Source of the DNA: Oopsacas minuta
Taxonomy: Eukaryota > Animalia > Porifera
NCBI GenBank assembly: GCA_024704765.1
Contig: JAKMXF010000300.1
Span: 124,001 to 188,000 of the forward strand
Length of the DNA: 64,000 bases
Direction of reading: 5' to 3'
Shown here: piece after piece, positions 9,822 through 40,200 of the stretch
Position numbering within the stretch: position 1 is the first letter of the stretch
How the letters are laid out: each line of letters opens with the position of its first letter
Program-made: the position numbers and the translations under genes
The notes under the pieces: model-generated
Told to the model about the DNA's origin: nothing
What the model saw: the letters and a program-made list of their open reading frames with translations, nothing else
The model's database searches: none

Positions 9822-12800
9822 ATGACAAAATTGATTTGTAGATTTGTTTGTGTTATTTTATTTGCATACATTTCACAGGTAATGAGTTTATTATACAAAG
9901 TTATCGTTTCATATTTTAAGAGTATTTTTCTCCAGTTCGCCAATGCTGAGATCCACCAGAAGGGATACTGTACATGGTATGGACAATGCGGACCAGGTTC
10001 CAATGGTGGTAAACTAAACTGCTACTACAATGGACCCGCTATTCATCAACCAAAGAGTTCTTCAGTTTTCCAAAAACTTCTTGATCTTTGTCCCAGTATG
10101 ATTAATGCTGATAATCCTTCAGATACAAGAGTGTGTTGTGATTTGAAACAACTTGAAACACTCGATGACTCAATTCTACTACCTAGACAGCTTCTAGCAA
10201 GATGTCCTGCTTGTTTAGCCAATTTTGTTGATCTGTTTTGTCGTGCAACTTGCTCACCTGACGGCTCGACATTCCAACAACCCGTAGTTGTAAATATGAC
10301 AAATGGTACGCAAGAGGTTAAATCCACAACTATGTATTTGGATCCAACAACTGTGAACCAATTTTTCACATCATGTAAAGACGTAAATTTCCCTCAAGGC
10401 AATGGAAAGGTAAAAACATACAATCAACTCCCATTATTTCGAAAATAACCGGTTTAGAACACTTATATACACAATTTAGAACTTCAAATAATGACGTGTT
10501 TCGATATAACGGAAGTTGACTGTAGTATTTTAATAAATCGATATTTATATAGTTTTATTTCTAATTTTAGGCTTTAAGCTTGCTATGTGGGACTAGTGTA
10601 AAAACATGCAATGGATTGACGTGGTTGAATTTTATGGGAAATGTCGGTAATGGAAATACACCGTTTCCAATCGTATACAAAAACACAACAGATGGTTTGG
10701 GGCCTGGACAGAGTTTGTATAAATACGAGCCGAATTTCTGTAATAAAGTTTATAATAATACGAAATGTTCTTGTCAAGACTGTAGCGCTTCCTGTACAAA
10801 CATTCCTACCATTCCACCTTCACGAAATGTAACTAAGATATTCGGTTTAGGAGCAGATTTGTTCTCAATTATAGTCTCGTATGGCATATTTATTGTTCTA
10901 TTCGTACCAGCTGTTATTCTGTATGGAATAGTTATGTTGTTGATTGAGAGAAACTCAAAATTGTCAACCACAGAAGAAAGAAAAGCCTTGATTGAGAAGA
11001 AAGAAGCTGATGAGATATTCGATCGGAAATACGGTCTTACAAAGCCAGAATGTGGCATATGTGGTATTGGGAACTATTTTGACTATTATCTACGTCTAAG
11101 CTTCTATTATTGGGGATATTTCGTGGCCAAATACCCCTGGGTTATCATTATTGGTGCTTTTGTCATTGTTATACCCCTCTGCGGAGGAATTGGGTTAATG
11201 AAGATCATTACTAATCCTGTTGAGCTATGGTCTGCTCATAATAGCCAGGCTAGACATGAAAAGGATTATTTCGATGAACATTTTGGACCTTTTTACCGTT
11301 CAGAAATGTTGATTTTTACAAGCAAAAATGTGTCTTCTTTTAATCATACGCTACACAAAAGTGTTACTGATGGAGGAAAGAATGTTTCATATAATCACAT
11401 GTTTCAAAAGGAAATTCTACTAGAAGTGAGTTCATATTTACTTGATTTTATGCGATTTTTATTCGATGTTTTTCCTTTTGTAGATATTAGAGATTCAAAA
11501 TAATTTGACTGTCATGAAAGTTCCCTACAAGAACGGTACTATAACGCTTGAAGATATTTGCTATACACCGTTATCGCCTGGGAATACGAATTGCACTATA
11601 ATGAGTGTATTACAGTACTTTCAGAATTCAGAGGGAAAACTTAATTTGACTGCCACTACTGCTAATGATGAGGAAATTAATTATCTAGATCACATTTACA
11701 ATTGTAACAGGTAAGTTATAATTCTGATACGTGCACGGAAATTTTCCGCGAATTCATTAGAATAGGTGACTAAGTTTTTGCCAACTTCAATTATTGATTT
11801 CTCTAATAGGAATCCTACTGGTATTCATGATACTGCTATTCCTATACCTTGTATTGGGCAATTTGGAGGACCTGCTCTTCCTAACCTTATCCTAGGAGGT
11901 TTTGGTGGTGAGTTTAACTTGTTTATTTACAGTAGAACTCGGTTAGTACGTACTTTTCTCCAAAACGGATACCAATTCTAGTATTAATTGTATAGGAAAT
12001 TACGAAGAATATTCGGATAAGACCTAGTGAGGTTAAAGTGTACACATTACGTCTTATCTTAGTTCTATTTCATTATAATCGATCAAAATTACTTCTATCA
12101 TACTCCACAGTAATATTACATACAATTTATAACGTGTAATATGATTATTATTATTATGGCAAACTACTGATTATATTCGTTATTATTAACGTCGGTTAAG
12201 TTTCAATTACACTATGAAATTAATGGAATAGAAAAAGCTGGATAGTAATATGATTTACTATACCAGAAGTTTTCTAATACTCTACTTGTAATTGGGTGTA
12301 CTATTACACAGGCATTTTTCAGGGTAGAATATATCTGGTGAGCGATCGGATGATATGTGGCCTGATCATGTATCCATTTCACTAATTTGGTTGTTAGAAT
12401 ATAGATTATGTTACAGGAAGCTTTTTACTTGTTATATCATATATAGTGGAGTAATCATTAAATCTTAATGGGGATGTGGAACTCAGGATATAAATGGTCT
12501 ATAGCATTCTATACGCTAATGCAATCCCACTAGCTGATTTCTTCTGTTAGTATGTTCAAAGCACTTATTCGGAATATTCATGATGTAATGATATTAACAT
12601 ATTATATTTTTTCGAAATGAACATATTTCCTAGAAATTCATTTTGAAAATTTGTCAAATTGCGCCAATATGACGTCATTGCCTTAATTCTGAATGAACTA
12701 GGTGTCATAGGGAATCCTGTTCCCACGAACATGGGAATACTTTTTCCCGTTTCCTTGATCGTGTTGCTAAGTGTGCAAGGAGAAAGACTCGGAGCAACAG

Positions 12801-31236: not shown

Positions 31237-34200
31237 ATGGAATATTATTCAGGAGAGACAGATAATGAACCATTCAATTTCTTTACAACCAAACCTCCCG
31301 AGAAAGGAAAGAGGCTATTTTTGTACCAGAATGGACATAATAAAATGTTTAAAACTTTCGTTTACAACAGTAGAAATGTGAGAGATTTCAGTTCTTTCTT
31401 AAATCAGGTTACATATGCAGTTGATGCACCTGCAGCTGTACGTAATATATACACACCACATGAAGGCCATCGAGTTAAGAACTTAGATAATTTGAAAGAT
31501 GGCGCGAGTTATGTTGTTGGTGGTAAGGAAGGTTTTAAGCAAGTTAGGTTAGTATTCAATAAATTGAATCAGGTTTCTATGGGGCCACTGTCATGTTAGT
31601 TGGTAACTTGTTTCAGCTCCTCCGCCCGCATCAAGTTTACCTGCCGCGTGAATATTGTCATTATTTCACCATTTTCTCAGTGAAATTCAACTACACATAT
31701 ATTTTCTAACAGGTGAATAGTAGTGATTTTATCTTCACAGATCGAAGTAGATTAAACGAAAAATTTCCATGAATTGGCCACTTTGTATTATGAAAATGTG
31801 TAGCTGAAACGAGTTTCTCATTAACAGGGGCCTAATTGTATTTAGTATTTACAATATTTCTTATAGCTATGGAATGGGACATAGTGTGAGGAATATATCA
31901 CTCAGAAAATCACTGGATACCAAGGTAATATACTTTATACAATAAATATACACAGAATATTTTCATTTATATATTCCTATAGAGTTTAGTATTACCTCCA
32001 CTACCACCTTTACCAAAGCAAATAATTGCTCAAGCTAGATTCCTAGACAATACAAATAGACCTATTGTGATCACGTAAGTAATTTATAATGTATGTCCTA
32101 TAACATTCAAGGTATAAATAGTAATTCTGCCAAATGTATCTGTACATTCTTTGAGTATTATGTTAAGCTTGTCAGCTGCTCCTAGAATAAGCCCAAATTG
32201 GGCTTGTTGTAGCTCAGAATTGTCATTCATGTGTGTTACTATTGATATTCCTTTTCCCATGATTTCTATGCTAACCAAACCGGCAGAAAATCCTCCTTGG
32301 AATTTTATTTCTATTACTTCTATTCTGACGTCCTCTTTAAATTGGAATGAAATTGATTGAAATTTCCCTTGTTCAGAATTCCAACATGTTTCTTCGTTTC
32401 CATCTAGTAAATGCTGTTTTCCAAACTGTTTCACATCTTTGTTCAAGACTGAACTTACTCTTATTTTCGCTATCAAATAATTAATATTACTTTCTTGAGC
32501 TAATAATCCTGATCCTGCTGTTGCCATTTGAATAAATATTCTCTAATTAGATGTGTAGATAATATCTATGGATTATTTCATTATATATTGGTTGTTCATA
32601 ATTGTATAATGCAATTACACTATAAATGCAATATTCGATGCGGACACTAGCCGTAACAGGGGTTGTTCTTGTTTGCAAGTTTTAACAAATTTACATGTGT
32701 GTGGACAGCCAATCGCCCAATATCTTATCATACACACTTTTCTAAGGTGATAATTAAACAACTTTAGGAGCATATTGCTTCTTTTGGCGAATTCATTCCA
32801 ATGATGTTTATTTGTAACAACTTCATAAGTCTATTGTTTATTTGCTATTCAATTATATAGACAATGTATTGTGTACGTAAGTCAGGTAAATTGCCCATCA
32901 CCATTCATACAAATATTACGCCTAAACAAATAAAAGTAGGAATCCTGTTCATGTAGGTATAATGACATCTTTCAATAAATAGCCAAACTGTTGTATTGTA
33001 TAGTCCATAATACTATATTTACTTTTGCATTTCTTCTTAAAATATTTCAAAATGGAGCTTTCATTACATATGGTCGCGGTTTTTCATGTAATTACAAGTG
33101 TATGTGGATTCGTTATTGGTACTTGTGTCTTGACGTATGCTCTCGTCAACTTGGCAACTTTCATCGAGCTAGGACTCATCGTATTCGGCTCATATTTCAT
33201 TTTTATAAGTATAGTATATTTCTTGTTATTTTCAATGAGTTACTTGTGTGATTCATGTTCATTGAGAACTTTAAAGTGGATCTGGTATTCTTATTCTCTC
33301 TTCACTCTATTTGTGATCATTCTAGACACCGTTACTGTTTTCTATCTGTTTATATCTGTTTGTTTGGGTGCAAACGTTAGCTCGCTTCTAGTTTGTTCGC
33401 TACTACTCTTGGCATATATAATTGTGAAGATAATTCTTTGTTGTTTCCAAATTAAATCATTGAGTGTTTCCGCTAAAACAGAACCTGCAGTACGAATTAA
33501 TGCAGAAACAGAACCCCCCTCTTATATTGAAGTTTGTCCAGAACTTGTAAACACTCTTCCTCCATCTTATCGTGATGTTATTGTTGACGTAGAATCTAAT
33601 AAACAGACTTGTGATGAAGTTTGAATCGTTGAGCGCGAACTCAACCAAAATCTCTAAATTAAATTCTATATTTTCTTATTCAGCTCCGCTATTGTGTTGT
33701 TTTATTATAGGAGTTTCATTATATTTTCACTTTATTTTCTTACAACTTATATTAACATATTTAGGAATAAATAAAGTTATTGGTTTATTATTATATAAGA
33801 ATTTGTTAATGTTATTCTGAATTGAGGAGGGAAGTATGTTGTTTGTGTCCAAATAATAATTTAGCTAACGCCTGAATTATATACGCTATGCATTAACAAA
33901 TTTGCTTTGTTATGATGGGCTTAAGAATTGCTAGATGGCAAAAATGTGAAGCAAACACGCCAAAGCTCATAATATACGTACAATTTCAATCCTCAAATTC
34001 TATTTTTTTGGAAATATTTTGTTTATTATAGTGTCTATCGTAATGGTGAACTACAGCAAAAAGGAAGTAAGATTCTATTGACACAGAGAGAATTGACTTC
34101 ATGGGAACGAGTTAGTAGTTATTGAATAATTATTTTGAGATATTTATTCCCATCTTTTTAGGTTTTGGAAATTATAACTGATAAGTCTGGCCTATTTTCA

Positions 34201-37200
34201 TCTGCTAAAAAGTATGTCTAATTCGCGTCTACACTTATAATAATATTTATTATTTATATTTATTCCACAGAGTATATACAACTGAAGGGAAAAGGATTAA
34301 ATTATTGGCAGACTTTGTGCATCAAGGAAAATATGTTGCAGTAGAGCCTAATAGGTAATATTATTGATTTTCACAAATATTTGGCTTCAAAATACAGTGA
34401 AACCTCGTCAATACGAACAACCATCCGACGGTCAAATTTGTTCGCTTTATCCAGAGAAATACCAATTGAATAATCATGTTAGGACCTGATTTTGTTGTCT
34501 TATCTGGAAATTCTTATTAGCCGTGTTTGTATTCACGAGGGCCGACTGTACGTGTCATTTCAATGTGTATCGAAACTTATCATCCTCAGGATTATACGTA
34601 TAAATGAGACCTTCCATAACTATGAATTTTGGCTTAAGAAATAATCCCTTGTGGATAAAATTAGTGATGTCAGGTAACCTGAGCTACTCACTACAAATAT
34701 GACTATACTGAGATTATCTATCTTGATAAGATATTAGATTAAAATATTTACTGATTATATTCTATGTCTCAATCTCAACATATTAAAGTTTTAATTGTGG
34801 GTGGACATCGAGTTGGTAAAACTACACTATTTTGTCAGCTTGTCCGAGGACAAAGCTTCCCTGGAGGCAATGACTCATTAAAACAATCAAGCGAGTACAT
34901 TATACTCAATGGTAATTTGCATATAGAAATACATGATTGTCTAGTTTCATCCCCTAAGTCATTGATAACGCAAACATGGCGAAATGTGAATGCAATTATA
35001 TACATGTTCTCATATGAAGATCTGAGATCGCTACATGAAGTTTCGGTTTGGTTTCGTCACGTAAAGGAGCTGCTGTGTGACGGACTTGTCCACCAAATTA
35101 TCGTCGGAAACAAAGTAGATTTGGCTAAGATTTCGGAGGAGGAATCCTTCGATTCCACACTAAAGACGCTTTGTAAGGAATTGAGTGTAACAGATCAAGA
35201 TAAATTTTCTGTAACAGCTACTACAGGTGACGGAATCGATGCAATTAAAGCTAGAATTGGTGAAAAGTTTCGTGAATATGTTACTCGGGGTCCCTTTCCT
35301 GATTCCTTATGTATTGTCCCACGTCAAACCCATTCAGGCTGTATGTGTATTAACTAGAATACTCTGATTTGGTATAATTTATATGTGATTACAATTCTAT
35401 TGTATTGATGCTAGGAATATATTATTAAGCTCTTTCTATTCGCATCGGATACGGATGGAAGAGTTCTTATAATCCATCTCAATATTTTGTAATTAGTAAA
35501 GTAGAACTCAGAATAATTACGTCATATCTGAGTAGATATTGTGTTAAAATGAATGGGAACTAAAATTTGGTGTGAGAGAAGGAGTGTACGTCTTATCCGA
35601 ATTATACCATATTACTTGTATTATTACAATTATGATTGCAATAACAGTTGCAGTAGAAACTCGTTTCCATTACACCTAAAAGTATTGAAATTATTACTAA
35701 TTCCTCTGGAGAAGAAGTAAAGTTTTTGACATATTCCCTGGTGTGCTTACTAGTAGTTCCTACTGACATTCCCGTGTTACATTTTATTACATTAAGTGTT
35801 GTATTCACAATCTAAAGTTAATAAGAACTACGTACTATCATAATGAAATGGGAAATGGTACATGGAACCTGATATTTGGTTCCATGTGATAAGATGTTTG
35901 GGGAATATCTAATGATGAATTTTCCTAATATTGATACCTACTTATGATAATAACTAGAATGTTGACGGGGTAACGAGGTTCTTACTGGAATTTACTAACT
36001 CCAGTAGAACCTCGAATTCACACATTTCAACGAGTTTGGAAATATCCACATTTTATTGTCCTAAGATAGTAATTAGAGCAAGCATATTTGTAGTTAATTT
36101 ATACAACAATATGCATCATCAGTCTTAGTACCAACAGGTTTATCAATTGGTAGACGATCTTTTACTCTTGGTCGTTTGTTTATGTAATCTTGACCTATTT
36201 CGTTAATCATTTCTGGAATACCTTCTCCCGTAGTTCCAGATACTTTAAAATTGTGTTTGCTTTCTATCAAAGGTTTTATTCTAGCAATACTATCATTAAT
36301 GCCATCTTCAGGTGGAACTAGGTCGCATTTATTCCCTACTAGACAGTTTATAACGCTAGACTCATGTGAGATATTCTTGTATATTGATTGATACCATTTA
36401 CCCATCTCCTCAACCGAGCTTTTGCGGTCCAATGAATACACGCACAATACTATGTCTAGGTTGCGACAAAGCGTAGTGTTAATTGAAGTGGGTGTGGCAC
36501 TGATAGTGTCACGTACTTGGATGTTAATCTGTTGACCCTGTGCTGTCCAAGAAGCTAGACCAGTATCCTCAGAAATTGGGTATAGAGAGCGAGGGGCTTG
36601 CGAACGATACATAATCTGGTTAAATATTACTGTCTTCCCGACAGATTTCCCTCCAATAATTAGTATATTACAAGTAGACATCGTCCAATGAGTATTTTAT
36701 CTTGTTAATATTGCCTAATGAGACTTTATCTTAATTTACATATCCAATTGATTCTATCGTATTTATATTATATAATTACAGATGATGTATTCAAAATTAA
36801 TAATCTCACTTCTGTCCGCCATAAATATGTCCTTGGAAATAACTAGAAATATCCAAACAGTATATTTTGTAAATGCTAATAGTTCTCAAGCAATGGTACA
36901 ATTAACTTTTATTATTTTTCAGTATTTTCCAGGAATTTCTGTATGTTCTTCCCCTTGAAACAATACTAATAATCATTTAATTCGGTAGACATAATATTTC
37001 ATTCCTCCCTAATTTGTATTTTACTAATTTAATCTCATCGACACGTGTTTTGATTAAATTTGTATACATCATCTTTTGGGGATAAGATATATAAATGAAG
37101 GAATATTCAGTTTTACATTAAAATAGCTTGAACTCTGATAGACAATGTCTAATTGTAATATACTAATCGTTGGAGGAAAATCTGTCGGGAAGACAGTAAT

Positions 37201-40200
37201 ATTTAACCAGATTACGTATCGTTCAACAACACCTCGCTTTCTCTACCCAATTTCTGAGGATACTGGTATAGCTTCTTGGACAGCACAGGGTCAACAGATT
37301 AACATCCAAGTACGTGACACTATCAGTGCCACACCCACTTCAATAAATGCTACACTATGCCGCAACCTTGACATAATATTATTTGTGTATTCGTTAGATA
37401 GAAAAAGCTCAGTTGAGGAGCTGGGTGAATGGCACGATTTAATATACAGGTTTATCCCACCTGACGTCATCAGCTGTTTAGTAGGCAATAAATGTGATCT
37501 AGTTACATCTGATGAAGGTTTCAATGATAGTATTGTTAGAATAAAACCTATCATTGGAAGCAAACACAATTTTAAGGTATCGGCTGTTACGGGAGAGGGT
37601 ATTCCGCAGATGGTTGAAAAAATAGCGCGTGATTACTTGACGAAACAACCAAGACAGCCTACTGGTGGTGTAATAGTCGGGGGAATACGTACCCCTCCTG
37701 GTGATGCATATTGTTGTATTAATTAATTATTTGGTTTATTTATTTCTCTCATTTGTGTATACTCATAATATTGTTTGAATGTTATAATTTCATTTATATG
37801 CCAACACTAAAATTCATTGAGCAATCTTTCATATACATTCAATATGCTGTTATGCTAATTCTAATAAAGAAACAGCATTTCTTCCTTGCCAAGGAAATTC
37901 CCTAAAATAGTATAGAGCATTTCTATTAGCAGTAATTACTGTTACAAACGAATAAAGTAATTTGATCTAGTTAATGCATTACTTTACATGGGACTATTTC
38001 ACAGACACTTTAAGAAGCTTCCTTATGGTGCTATTGAGTTACTAGCAGGGCAATCTCCTCTAAAAATCTCGCGGTGAGTTATAATTATTTCCAGAACTTG
38101 TTGCTTTGTGTATTTACATGAATTGTCTGTTATGTTCTATACTCTCGTGGTGTATGTATACTGAGTAAGATTTGTATTAGCATCCCCCAAGTATGATATA
38201 ACATTACTCAAGATATTTTTAATAATCCAGTACTATACTCTCCAGGCAATTCCTAATATTCCATCAGCTTTAAATTATTCTAGTCATTATATTTGACCAC
38301 ATTTACACCTAACTGTAAATATTAGATCAAATCCATATTCATATTCACTTTTGAGATAAGCAATGTTTAGACGGAGTTTAATGTAATTTTAAGTGCATTT
38401 TTCGGTCATTTTGCCTCTTTCTAATTATGCAGGTGTTTTGATAGTGGGGCAATCCTATTAGCAATTCGCTTATTAGCAATTTGCTTTTGGGCAAGTTTTA
38501 CCTGCAAAATTCTGATATCCGAAACATGATTTTACAATTTTAATTGACTGTATATTATTTCTTAAGACCAATTGGGAGTCATCCTGTTCTAATGAGGAGA
38601 AAACGAATTGTTTACAGACCAAATGTAAAGAGTGAAGCTAGTCTATCTAATGTTATAACAACTCTACCCCAACAAGCTCCTCTCACTCTACAACCTATTG
38701 TACGTAAGATAATTACATCTTATATCAGTGTTTTAATTATATTTTCTCTGTAATTTTCTAGGATAATCCTGATAGAAAAATCAAGAAAATTAGCGTTTCT
38801 AAACAGAGACCTCTTGGGGGAAGAAGAGATAAGGAAAAAAGAGAACTAGAAAAATTCAAATTTAAAGTTAGAGAGGTAATATCGCAATATTCAAAGCTAT
38901 TTACATTGTGCAATTCTCGTATGTTCTAATTTTATTCTTTTCCAATTTCACCTAAATCTGAATCAATTAGTAAGCATGAAATATTATGAAATATTCTATT
39001 GTATATTTACTTTTGCATATATAAATAATTGTGTGATTTGTTGTGTCAGAATTGATATTATATAACAAACCATTTGGTAACTGTTTATTAGATTTGCCCA
39101 ATTTACTACATAACACACTACTACGGTATTGAGCTTTTCTTCTGTGGCCCTTTCAGCAAAATAACCCGATATCTTCACTATTTCTATTAATTAATGGTTA
39201 AATATTTCAATTTTTTTTAGGACTCAGCATTTGCCCCAAGCAGTGCTACACTTCCTCAAGTAGATCGCACCGTAAACTCACCAGATGAACAAGAGGGTGT
39301 AATCTATCCTTCTAATAATTTAGAAGAAACTCAACATACTTCTGTGCCCAAACAAGATAGTGTAATAAAGGCAGAGACATACTATCCATTAGCTGAGGGA
39401 GAAGTTGAAGATGCTCCTGGTAAGTTATTGTTTGTATTTATAATTTTCTAGAATAGTTTTCCCCATAGTTCGTATAGAATAAACTTTTCCACGATTGAAA
39501 GATTTTGATTCCTAGATCTTTTAATTTTATGCGCGTCTCGAAAATATGTTTATTCGCCCAGAACATGGAGCCTAAACTACGTCTAATAAACTGTATTAAA
39601 TGAACAACTTTGCAATAAACGTGTAGCCAGGGCAAAATTGATCCTGTGCTAATTTAAGCCTCAGGGTCGGCGCTTTGTGTCCTTCATGTCTGATGAACTG
39701 GCACTCTTGATCCCCGCCAAGCACCTAGATAAATCCCTGCGTGTAGCCTAGAAATTCAACATATCTTCTCATGCAATAGTCAACAATATTTCACGTGATT
39801 GTCGCATACAAGAAAGTTCACCATATAAGGTGTACCAACTAGTAGAAATAACGTCAGATCTAATTTACAGCTAATCTTACTATATTCATTAATCCTTACA
39901 AACGATCCCATTGCTAAACTGTGCACTAAACTCTATACACTGTTTTGTAGAGGTTATTCCTCACAGGTCATGTTATTTTAATCATTACATATACAGTATT
40001 TTATTACTTAATATCCAACAGTTGAACTAATAGTGAGAAAGACGTTACTGTGTATTATTGTAGATACTTTCACTTTCAAACATTCCTTGTTTGGAATTTG
40101 AATATTCTCCATAATTTAGGAATAAACAATTATTAATAATTGAAAACTGCTTTCAATGCTTACATTTACAGTTTCCATTTTGAAAGTTTTGTAAGGTTAT

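What the first reader, a model, noticed from the sequence alone, without database searches (positions are those of the whole stretch)
34764..37726. Intron-nested cluster of three small GTPases lacking both switch motifs but keeping nucleotide-binding and lipidation signals
Seen: all three retain GxxxxGKT, NKxD and a G5-like motif, but G3 DxxGQ is replaced by DCLVS or DTISA (no Gly, no catalytic Gln), and in two the switch-I YxPT region reads LYPISED (no Thr). C-termini are CMCIN, YCCIN and YCCIN. Known: G2 Thr and G3 Gly sense the gamma-phosphate, the Gln drives hydrolysis, and CCXX ends are Rab-type geranylgeranylation signals; RGK proteins have a different altered G3. Inference: a new family of membrane-anchored pseudo-GTPases or non-switching GTP-binding scaffolds. 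The ORFs are intact despite deep divergence between copy 1 and copies 2/3, which suggests selection.
Basis: partly seen in the sequence, partly recalled or inferred. Interest (0 to 1): 0.78.

Follow-up and report, generated by a model that had tools for sequence, protein, structure and literature searches.

The report
Glass-sponge Rab-like proteins with broken switches
Three real, selected genes inside one intron of a doublecortin gene encode a small-GTPase family so far seen only in what are probably glass sponges; it keeps the nucleotide pocket and a lipid-anchor tail but has lost the residues that normally sense and split GTP, so it is probably a membrane-bound non-switching G protein, which no experiment has yet tested.

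Summary
Three intact intronless ORFs (197, 195 and 193 aa) match Pfam Ras and fold as G domains. G1, NKxD and G5 are kept. G3 reads DCLVS or DTISA, and the G2 Thr column holds Pro in copies 2 and 3 and Ser in copy 1.

A spliced contig joins 34354 to about 38005, so the cluster sits in a 3650-nt GT..AG intron of a doublecortin gene.

There are two old paralogue types: A (copy 1) and B (copies 2 and 3). They lie side by side in the same intron in seven other assemblies, always intact. dN/dS is 0.08-0.28 between orthologues and 0.37 between copies 2 and 3.

A profile search of 1.84 billion representative proteins found only the two family clusters (283-291 bits). The next single domain scored 93 bits. 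No known subfamily fits: type B is nearest Rab12/Rab10 and type A nearest Rab33B/Rheb, at 28% identity or less.

Nucleotide binding, hydrolysis and lipidation remain untested. Nesting itself is ordinary in glass sponges.

Another first-stage reading (s1-237711) noted the same stretch as the doublecortin host gene. I found no earlier follow-up of these GTPases.

The parts
34764..35357 (+). Copy 1, type A Rab-like G protein, 197 aa. G1 GGHRVGKT, Ser38 at the G2 column, G3 DCLVS, NKVD, T-A at G5, tail GCMCIN.
   Evidence: An in-frame stop lies 12 nt upstream of the ATG. X4 contigs over the ORF are much deeper than over its flanks.
36094..36681 (-). Copy 2, type B, 195 aa. An inverted duplicate found only in this species. 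G3 DTISA, tail AYCCIN.
   Evidence: sister to copy 3, SH-aLRT 95. dN/dS against copy 3 is 0.37. X4 depth is at intron background.
37145..37726 (+). Copy 3, type B, 193 aa. It shares strand and order with the single type B gene of the other species, so it is probably the positional orthologue.
34355..38004 (+). Host intron (GT..AG, 3650 nt) of the doublecortin-domain gene. It holds all three genes.
   Evidence: A spliced contig in X4 joins 34354 to about 38005. The splice sites were read.
34266..34354 (+). Host exon just upstream of the intron, coding the end of the second DCX domain. Its 5' edge is approximate: the X4 joints end at 34271 or 34274.
   Evidence: Conserved tblastx block. Pfam DCX E 3.6e-6. 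X4 joints at 34211>34271/34274 and 34354>38006.
38005..38072 (+). Host exon just downstream of the intron.
   Evidence: Conserved block at 38003-38080. X4 joints 34354>38006 and 38072>38567.
31237..31560 (+). First coding exon of the host gene, holding DCX domain 1. Its 3' edge is approximate.
   Evidence: Pfam DCX E 5e-16. Conserved in all loci.

Best explanation
These genes form a lineage-restricted family of Rab-like small G proteins, seen so far only in what are probably hexactinellid (glass sponge) assemblies. An old tandem duplication gave two types, A and B. Both lie inside the same intron of a doublecortin gene in every species sampled. This species added an inverted copy of B. Shown: the genes are real, intact, conserved in synteny and under purifying selection. 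They adopt the G-domain fold. They keep the P-loop, the (N/T)KxD motif, the S/T-A motif and a C-terminal di-cysteine tail. They have lost the gamma-phosphate sensors (G2 Thr, G3 Gly), the catalytic Gln and the guanine-stacking Phe. Inferred: they still bind a guanine nucleotide, because the pocket motifs stay invariant across species whose synonymous sites are saturated. They probably cannot hydrolyse GTP on their own and cannot perform the classical loaded-spring switch. They are probably held on a membrane by lipidated C-terminal cysteines. On this reading they act as permanently 'on', or state-insensitive, membrane adaptors: class II-type pseudoGTPases rather than timers.
For: Family and fold: Pfam Ras; AF2 models with pLDDT 86.5 and 88.5; best Foldseek matches are Rab10, Rab8, RhoB, Rheb and Rab33B. 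Isolation: only two clusters at 283-291 bits among 1.84e9 representatives, and the next single domain scores 93 bits. The word-index search found 16 family proteins, none of them named, and the next hit scored 77 bits. Conservation: types A and B sit together in seven other assemblies in the same gene order, and all ORFs are intact. Selection: dN/dS is 0.12-0.19 for A and 0.08-0.28 for B, against 0.10-0.27 for a neighbouring gene; none of 1000 bootstraps reached 1. Motifs: G1, K and D of NKxD and the T-G-x-G after G5 are invariant, while G2, G3 and the Phe28 column are replaced in every member. A and B are sisters: SH-aLRT 97, and still 80.7 after the G2, G3, Phe28 and tail columns are removed. 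Expression: run X4 carries spliced host transcripts, and its contigs over copy 1 and copy 3 are deeper than the surrounding intron.
Against: No biochemistry exists. Loss of the Phe28 equivalent could weaken nucleotide binding. Type A keeps a Ser at the G2 position. TBC-type RabGAPs supply a Gln in trans (established knowledge; see entry 2G77), so the missing cis-Gln alone does not prove inactivity. The tail CMCIN is not a standard Rab motif, and REP recognition is uncertain because RabF-like segments are poorly kept. The expression evidence rests on contig depth, which the tool warns is a poor measure; the strand is unknown, and copy 2 shows none. That the species are glass sponges comes from earlier scan notes and from the fit to published genome traits. 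I did not test it.
Confidence: 0.55

Rival explanations
1. They are still working molecular switches that hydrolyse GTP by a non-canonical route. For example, a GAP could supply the catalytic residues in trans, as TBC GAPs do for Rabs or RapGAP does for Rap. A Ser or Thr of the altered switch II, or the Ser at G2 in type A, could take over sensing.
For: G1, G4 and G5 are strictly conserved. Type A has an invariant Ser at the G2 column, and type B has conserved hydroxyl residues at G3+1 and G3+2 and a Thr in EDTG. Asp57 is invariant. The altered switch II segments are themselves highly conserved within each type (DCLVS-PKSL in A, RDTIS..S.N in B), which points to a specific role rather than decay.
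Against: Gly60 is replaced by Val, Ser or Cys in all 16 members, and its flexibility underlies the switch II transition in canonical GTPases. The G2 Thr, G3 Gly, Gln61 and Glu62 are lost together. This resembles known hydrolysis-deficient proteins more than Rap-type variants, which keep DxxG.
Confidence: 0.25
2. They are nucleotide-free scaffolds (class I pseudoGTPases) that use the G fold only as an interaction surface.
For: The Phe28-equivalent column, which stacks on guanine, is lost in both types. The G2 Mg2+ ligand is lost in type B.
Against: GxxxxGKT, the K and D of NKxD, and the S/T-A motif are invariant or nearly so across lineages whose synonymous sites are saturated. Described class I pseudoGTPases have degenerate G motifs (PMC12490416).
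Confidence: 0.1
3. They are highly derived orthologues of a known Rab subfamily (Rab33 for type A, Rab12/Rab10 for type B) rather than a family of their own.
For: The combined profile scores Rab33B best (75.7 bits, against 67.5 for Rab12). The segment RNVNAIIYMFS resembles Rab33B's RNVHAVVFVYD. Type B alone scores Rab12 best.
Against: The two types point to different best matches. Type A scores Rheb as well as it scores Rab33B (51 against 50 bits). Identity to any match is 28% or less, under the 40% subfamily cut-off of the Rabifier scheme (PMC3192815). A and B group with each other, not with separate outside sequences. I did not build a tree against a named Rab reference set.
Confidence: 0.08
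4. They are decaying or non-functional ORFs, or exons of the host gene that have been misread as genes.
For: In run X4, copy 2 shows only background depth. Gene callers truncated some models.
Against: All ORFs are intact in eight assemblies. dN/dS is well below 1. The host transcript splices across the whole cluster. Copy 1 has its own ATG with an in-frame stop 12 nt upstream.
Confidence: 0.02

Closest known systems
Rab family small GTPases (nearest solved: Rab12, Rab10, Rab1, Rab8 for type B; Rab33B for type A)
   Same: Same G-domain fold. Same P-loop, NKxD and SA motifs. Similar length of about 195 aa. A hypervariable C-terminal stretch ends in two cysteines. From memory, CCxx ends such as Rab5's CCSN are known Rab tails.
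   Different: Identity is 28% or less. WDTAGQE is replaced by RDTIS.. in B and HDCLVS. in A. There is no G2 Thr in type B. The RabF segments are mostly not recognisable. Type A ends in CxCxx. No orthologue turned up outside the family's own assemblies.
Rheb
   Same: Type A scores Rheb as well as Rab33B by profile and by fold. Rheb is also a lipid-anchored G protein whose switch II behaves atypically (established knowledge).
   Different: Rheb keeps DTAGQ and the G2 Thr, and ends in a CaaX box. Type A groups with type B, not with outside sequences.
RGK proteins (Rad, Gem/Kir, Rem)
   Same: Small G proteins of the Ras superfamily. They bind nucleotide but have a non-canonical G3 and lack a classical switch. 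This is the best-known case of an altered G3 (established knowledge).
   Different: RGK has a DxWE-type G3, long N- and C-terminal extensions, and no lipid anchor. The family here has DTIS or DCLV, no extensions and a di-cysteine tail. No RGK chain appears in the listed top matches (best 60 by profile; best 50 by fold).
Hydrolysis-deficient Rho proteins (Rnd1-3, RhoH) and class II pseudoGTPases in general
   Same: Lipid-anchored small G proteins that stay nucleotide-bound and are controlled by expression or location rather than by a GTPase cycle. This is the working model proposed here. The class concept is described in PMC10731463.
   Different: Rnd and RhoH keep DxxG and the G2 Thr and differ mainly at the positions equivalent to Ras 12, 59 and 61. 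The sponge family has lost the sensors as well.
Rab-like proteins (RabL2, RabL3, IFT22/RabL5, IFT27)
   Same: Divergent Rab relatives with atypical catalytic residues.
   Different: From memory, these lack C-terminal prenylation cysteines and are widely conserved among eukaryotes. The family here has the cysteines and is lineage-restricted.

Membership tests
Ras superfamily small G domain (Pfam PF00071) | Significant match to the family profile, above the curated cut-off | tested here: met
   42, 57.5 and 60.3 bits against a cut-off of 21.6.
Ras superfamily small G domain (Pfam PF00071) | Alpha/beta G-domain fold | tested here: met
   AF2 pLDDT 86.5 and 88.5. Foldseek probability 1.00 to Rab, Rho, Ras and Rheb structures, with TM-score by target length (TMt) 0.7-0.85.
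Canonical switching GTPase | G2 Thr, which binds Mg2+ and senses the gamma-phosphate | tested here: not met
   Type B has Pro, Gly or His at that column. Type A has Ser in 8 of 8. The outside sequences have Thr in 71 of 78.
Canonical switching GTPase | G3 DxxG Gly and the catalytic Gln | tested here: not met
   Gly is replaced by Ser or Cys in B and by Val in A. Gln is replaced by Ala, Ser or Thr. This holds in all 16 members.
Canonical switching GTPase | G1 GxxxxGK[ST], G4 [NT]KxD and G5 S/T-A | tested here: met
   Invariant or nearly invariant in all members.
Rab family (Rabifier criteria, PMC3192815) | The best matches among small GTPases are Rabs | tested here: inconclusive
   Type B: Rab12, Rab10 and Rab1 come first. 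Type A: Rab33B ties with Rheb.
Rab family (Rabifier criteria, PMC3192815) | At least one RabF motif | tested here: inconclusive
   I compared by eye with RabF motifs recalled from memory. Only scattered residues match, for example the VY of RabF5 and the S-I of RabF3. No motif scanner was available.
Rab family (Rabifier criteria, PMC3192815) | At least 40% identity to a named subfamily; otherwise the protein is classed RabX | tested here: not met
   Identity to the nearest outside proteins is 15-28%.
Rab family | C-terminal cysteine pair for geranylgeranylation | tested here: met
   CCIN in type B and CMCIN in type A. Both cysteines are invariant and align with the CC or CxC ends of the outside sequences. 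Actual lipidation cannot be tested here.
Rab33 subfamily | Consistent best match of both types, with subfamily-level identity | tested here: not met
   Rab33B is best only for the combined profile and for type A. It ranks about 31st for type B. Identity is about 21%.
RGK family | DxWE-type G3, long terminal extensions, no lipid anchor | tested here: not met
   The sequences show DTIS or DCLV, no extensions and a cysteine tail. No RGK chain appears in the listed top matches by profile or by fold.
Class II pseudoGTPase (binds nucleotide, does not hydrolyse) | Nucleotide binding without catalysis | not testable with these tools
   The sequence pattern fits: the pocket is kept and the catalytic and sensor residues are lost. 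The definition, however, is biochemical (PMC10731463, PMC12490416).

The most novel reading that the evidence does not exclude
Types A and B are an obligate pair of permanently nucleotide-bound, lipid-anchored Rab derivatives. They would mark a membrane compartment peculiar to glass sponges, whose tissue is largely syncytial, by expression and location rather than by a GTPase cycle. If so, this is a new lipid-anchored pseudoGTPase family that evolved from a Rab and has been kept as a linked gene pair since before the sampled lineages split.
Probability: 0.25. Interest if true: 0.6.

Novelty: new variant of a known kind. Interest (0 to 1): 0.42.

Why it matters
Small GTPases that have lost their switch are a growing but still small class. 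Most known cases either lose nucleotide binding altogether or keep DxxG. A family under purifying selection that keeps the pocket and a lipid-anchor tail, yet has replaced both phosphate sensors and the catalytic Gln, would be a natural experiment on what a membrane-bound G domain can do without a cycle. It is also a lineage marker for a poorly studied animal group. The limits are plain: no function is known, no experiment has been done, the organism is hard to work with, and lineage-specific divergent Rab-like proteins are common in eukaryotes (the 'RabX' class of PMC3192815).

Tried and rejected
- Rab33 origin. The combined profile scored Rab33B best. Separate profiles disagreed: type A ties Rab33B with Rheb, and type B prefers Rab12. 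I kept this only as a minor rival.
- ESM Atlas look-alikes. Only generic Ras/Roc/Arf clusters came back, including protist and giant-virus clusters, with no specific family. I rejected a viral origin because synteny is conserved across host genomes.
- Naming the nearest representatives. Cluster look-ups gave no useful names beyond 'small GTP-binding protein' from Histomonas and Tritrichomonas.
- Identifying the species of the related assemblies. The neighbouring MutY-like proteins are ENA-only and unnamed.
- Literature. I found no paper on hexactinellid Rab or small GTPases. The two glass-sponge genome papers do not mention GTPases.
- RNA runs. No run is on record as RNA. Only contigs were available, so strand, transcript ends and expression levels could not be settled.
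- A tree against a curated, named Rab/Ras/Rho/Arf reference set was not possible, because no tool returned such sequences.
Full report
**1. What is there**

The region holds three uninterrupted ORFs: copy 1 at 34764-35357 (+, 197 aa), copy 2 at 36094-36681 (-, 195 aa) and copy 3 at 37145-37726 (+, 193 aa). All three match Pfam Ras PF00071 well above the curated cut-off, with E 9e-11, 2e-15 and 2e-16. A plain sequence search of solved structures puts Rabs first: Ypt6 and Rab10, at E about 3e-8. Copies 2 and 3 are 72% identical to each other. Copy 1 is about 25-28% identical to them. The window is AT-rich (about 34% GC) and has long uninterrupted exons.

**2. The motifs**

I aligned the 16 family members with their 78 nearest non-family single-domain proteins.

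- Kept: GxxxxGKT, the K and D of NKxD, the T-G-x-G after G5 and Asp57 are invariant. G5 itself reads S-A or S-G in type B and T-A or T-S in type A.
- G2 Thr column: the outside proteins have Thr in 71 of 78. Type B has Pro, Gly or His. Type A has Ser in all 8.
- G3 Gly column: the outside proteins have Gly in 74 of 78. Type B has Ser or Cys. Type A has Val.
- Catalytic Gln column: Ala, Ser or Thr in the family.
- Also replaced: the following Glu, the Trp before Asp57 (Arg in B, His in A) and the guanine-stacking Phe28 column.
- In three species the type B G4 motif reads TKCD, which is within the accepted [NT]KxD.
- Both C-terminal cysteines are invariant. They align with the CC or CxC ends of the outside proteins. 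In type B the tail DAYCCIN is invariant, and the longer TDDAYCCIN is identical in seven of the eight sequences (copy 3 reads PGDAYCCIN), although the G domains are only 53-64% identical between species.

Type A keeps a Ser at the G2 position, and type B has a conserved Thr five residues further on.

**3. Nesting**

Conserved exon-like blocks on the + strand flank the cluster. Pfam finds DCX in the first exon (31237-31596, E 5e-16) and in the exon that ends at 34354 (E 3.6e-6).

Of four public runs that hold the stretch, three have even depth, like DNA. The fourth, X4, has depth in the thousands over host exons and 3-130 over introns. X4 also carries spliced contigs joining 34211>34271/34274, 34354>38006 and 38072>38567. 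The genome shows GT at 34355 and AG at 38003-38004. The three genes therefore lie in a 3650-nt GT..AG intron of a doublecortin-domain gene.

Nesting is ordinary in this group. The Aphrocallistes vastus genome paper reports about 12% nested genes and strong microsynteny among glass sponges (PMC10282587).

**4. Relatives and synteny**

The word-index search found type B proteins only in ENA assemblies, and none is named. I fetched the loci. They show the same gene order in seven other assemblies: mannosidase, TDP1, an unknown gene, a MutY-like gene, the first DCX exon, an F5/8-C gene on the minus strand, a TM protein, type A, type B, MIF and B9-C2.

Every species has one type A gene followed by one type B gene on the host strand. 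Only the window's species has a second, inverted type B. Two type B models that gene callers had truncated are in fact full-length ORFs.

That the genome is a glass sponge comes from earlier scan notes. It fits the published traits, but I did not test it independently. The window's MutY-like protein is present in NCBI and UniRef.

**5. How isolated the family is**

I searched a profile of 15 members against 1.84 billion representative proteins. Two clusters came back, at 291 bits (type B) and 283 bits (type A). The higher totals that followed belong to multi-domain proteins, and the best single outside domain scores 93 bits.

The word-index search with the same profile found 16 family proteins, and then nothing above 77 bits. 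Atlas look-alikes are generic Ras/Roc/Arf clusters.

Profile searches of solved structures do not agree on a subfamily:

| Profile | Best matches |
|---|---|
| Types A and B combined | Rab33B 75.7 bits |
| Type A alone | Rab33B 51 bits, Rheb 50 bits |
| Type B alone | Rab12 65, Rab10 55, Rab1 50 bits |

AF2 models are confident (pLDDT 86.5 and 88.5) and dip over switch I and the tail. Foldseek gives the same mixed picture. Under the published Rabifier scheme, which needs a G domain, best hits to Rabs, at least one RabF motif and at least 40% identity for a subfamily call (PMC3192815), these proteins are at most unclassified 'RabX'.

**6. Evolution**

In a tree with the 78 nearest proteins, type A (SH-aLRT 99), type B (98) and A+B together (97) are each one side of a branch. 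Copies 2 and 3 are sisters (95). After I removed the G2, G3, Phe28 and tail columns, A+B still grouped together at 80.7. Long-branch attraction cannot be excluded. Adjacency and the shared tail point the same way.

For species pairs whose synonymous sites are not saturated, dN/dS values are:

| Comparison | dN/dS |
|---|---|
| Type A orthologues | 0.12-0.19 |
| Type B orthologues | 0.08-0.28 |
| Copy 2 against copy 3 (dS 0.48) | 0.37 |
| Neighbouring gene, same species pairs | 0.10-0.27 |

None of 1000 bootstraps reached 1 in any comparison. Copies 2 and 3 have evolved at indistinguishable rates (Tajima test, p 0.35-0.58).

**7. Expression**

X4 contigs over copy 1 have depth 880-2470, against about 130-150 in the flanks. 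Over copy 3 the depth is 119-232, against 20-36. Over copy 2 it is 33-45, which is background. The tool warns that contig depth is a poor measure, and the strand is unknown. I read this as weak support for expression of copies 1 and 3, and as no evidence for copy 2.

**8. Interpretation**

Strict conservation of G1, G4 and G5 across lineages with saturated synonymous sites argues that a guanine nucleotide is still bound. The joint loss of the G2 Thr, the G3 Gly, Gln and Glu argues against intrinsic hydrolysis and against the classical loaded-spring switch. This inference rests on established Ras-superfamily mechanism. PseudoGTPases are recognised by exactly such substitutions (PMC10731463).

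The invariant cysteine tails suggest lipid anchoring. Which enzyme would do it is open: RabGGTase through REP, a CaaX-type transferase acting on CCIN, or palmitoylation.

The best reading is a lineage-restricted pair of membrane-anchored, nucleotide-bound, non-cycling Rab derivatives. The rivals are:

- a non-canonical but working switch, since a GAP can supply Gln in trans;
- a nucleotide-free scaffold;
- a very derived Rab33 or Rab12 orthologue;
- decay, which is essentially excluded.

**9. Verdict**

This is a new, unnamed family-level variant within the known kind of atypical or pseudo small GTPases. The nesting is unremarkable for this group. I rate the interest as moderate.

Noticed in passing
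L007:1-8317 (ENA ERZ26869290 ctg232200): A second contig from one related assembly carries a rearranged version of the cluster. It has a type A fragment that lacks its N-terminal part, with inverted pieces next to it. It also has a full type B gene and two further type B pieces on the minus strand at the contig ends. All the type B pieces match P0005 exactly where they overlap it. This is either a recent inverted duplication like copy 2 here, or an assembly artefact.
   Followed up: partly
L008:5730-7322 and L009:4930-6549 (minus strand): Two related species have an extra gene of about 530 aa with weak LRR matches, nested between the TM-protein gene and type A. The window and the other loci lack it. 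Nested genes have therefore been gained or lost within this host gene.
   Followed up: no
window 34211-34274: In run X4 the host doublecortin gene shows two alternative joints for a tiny intron, skipping 59 or 62 nt. This suggests alternative acceptor use or alignment ambiguity. The host exons are very deep in that run.
   Followed up: no
window 36094-36681; L008:9860-10435; L009:9836-10411: Public gene calls truncate type B genes at internal Met codons, giving models of 172, 145 and 137 aa that lack the P-loop. The full ORFs are intact.
   Followed up: yes
L001, L003 and L004 type B genes (about 10001-10588): In three closely related species the G4 motif of type B reads TKCD instead of NKCD, and the Trp after helix 3 is replaced by Cys.
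   Followed up: partly
L002:14554-16608 and L003:14230-14628: The MIF gene downstream of the host gene is duplicated in one assembly and inverted in another, while the rest of the gene order is kept.
   Followed up: no
window 33025-33624 (+) and 32084-32527 (-): Two more genes sit in upstream introns of the same doublecortin gene and are conserved in all loci. One encodes a multi-pass membrane protein with no Pfam match. The other, on the minus strand, encodes a protein with weak F5/8 type C matches.
   Followed up: partly
same genome, another piece (note s1-248629): An earlier first-stage note reports another tandem pair of atypical Rab-like proteins in this genome, with DQQF in place of DxxG. 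It did not appear among the close relatives of the present family, so it is probably a separate divergent lineage.
   Followed up: no
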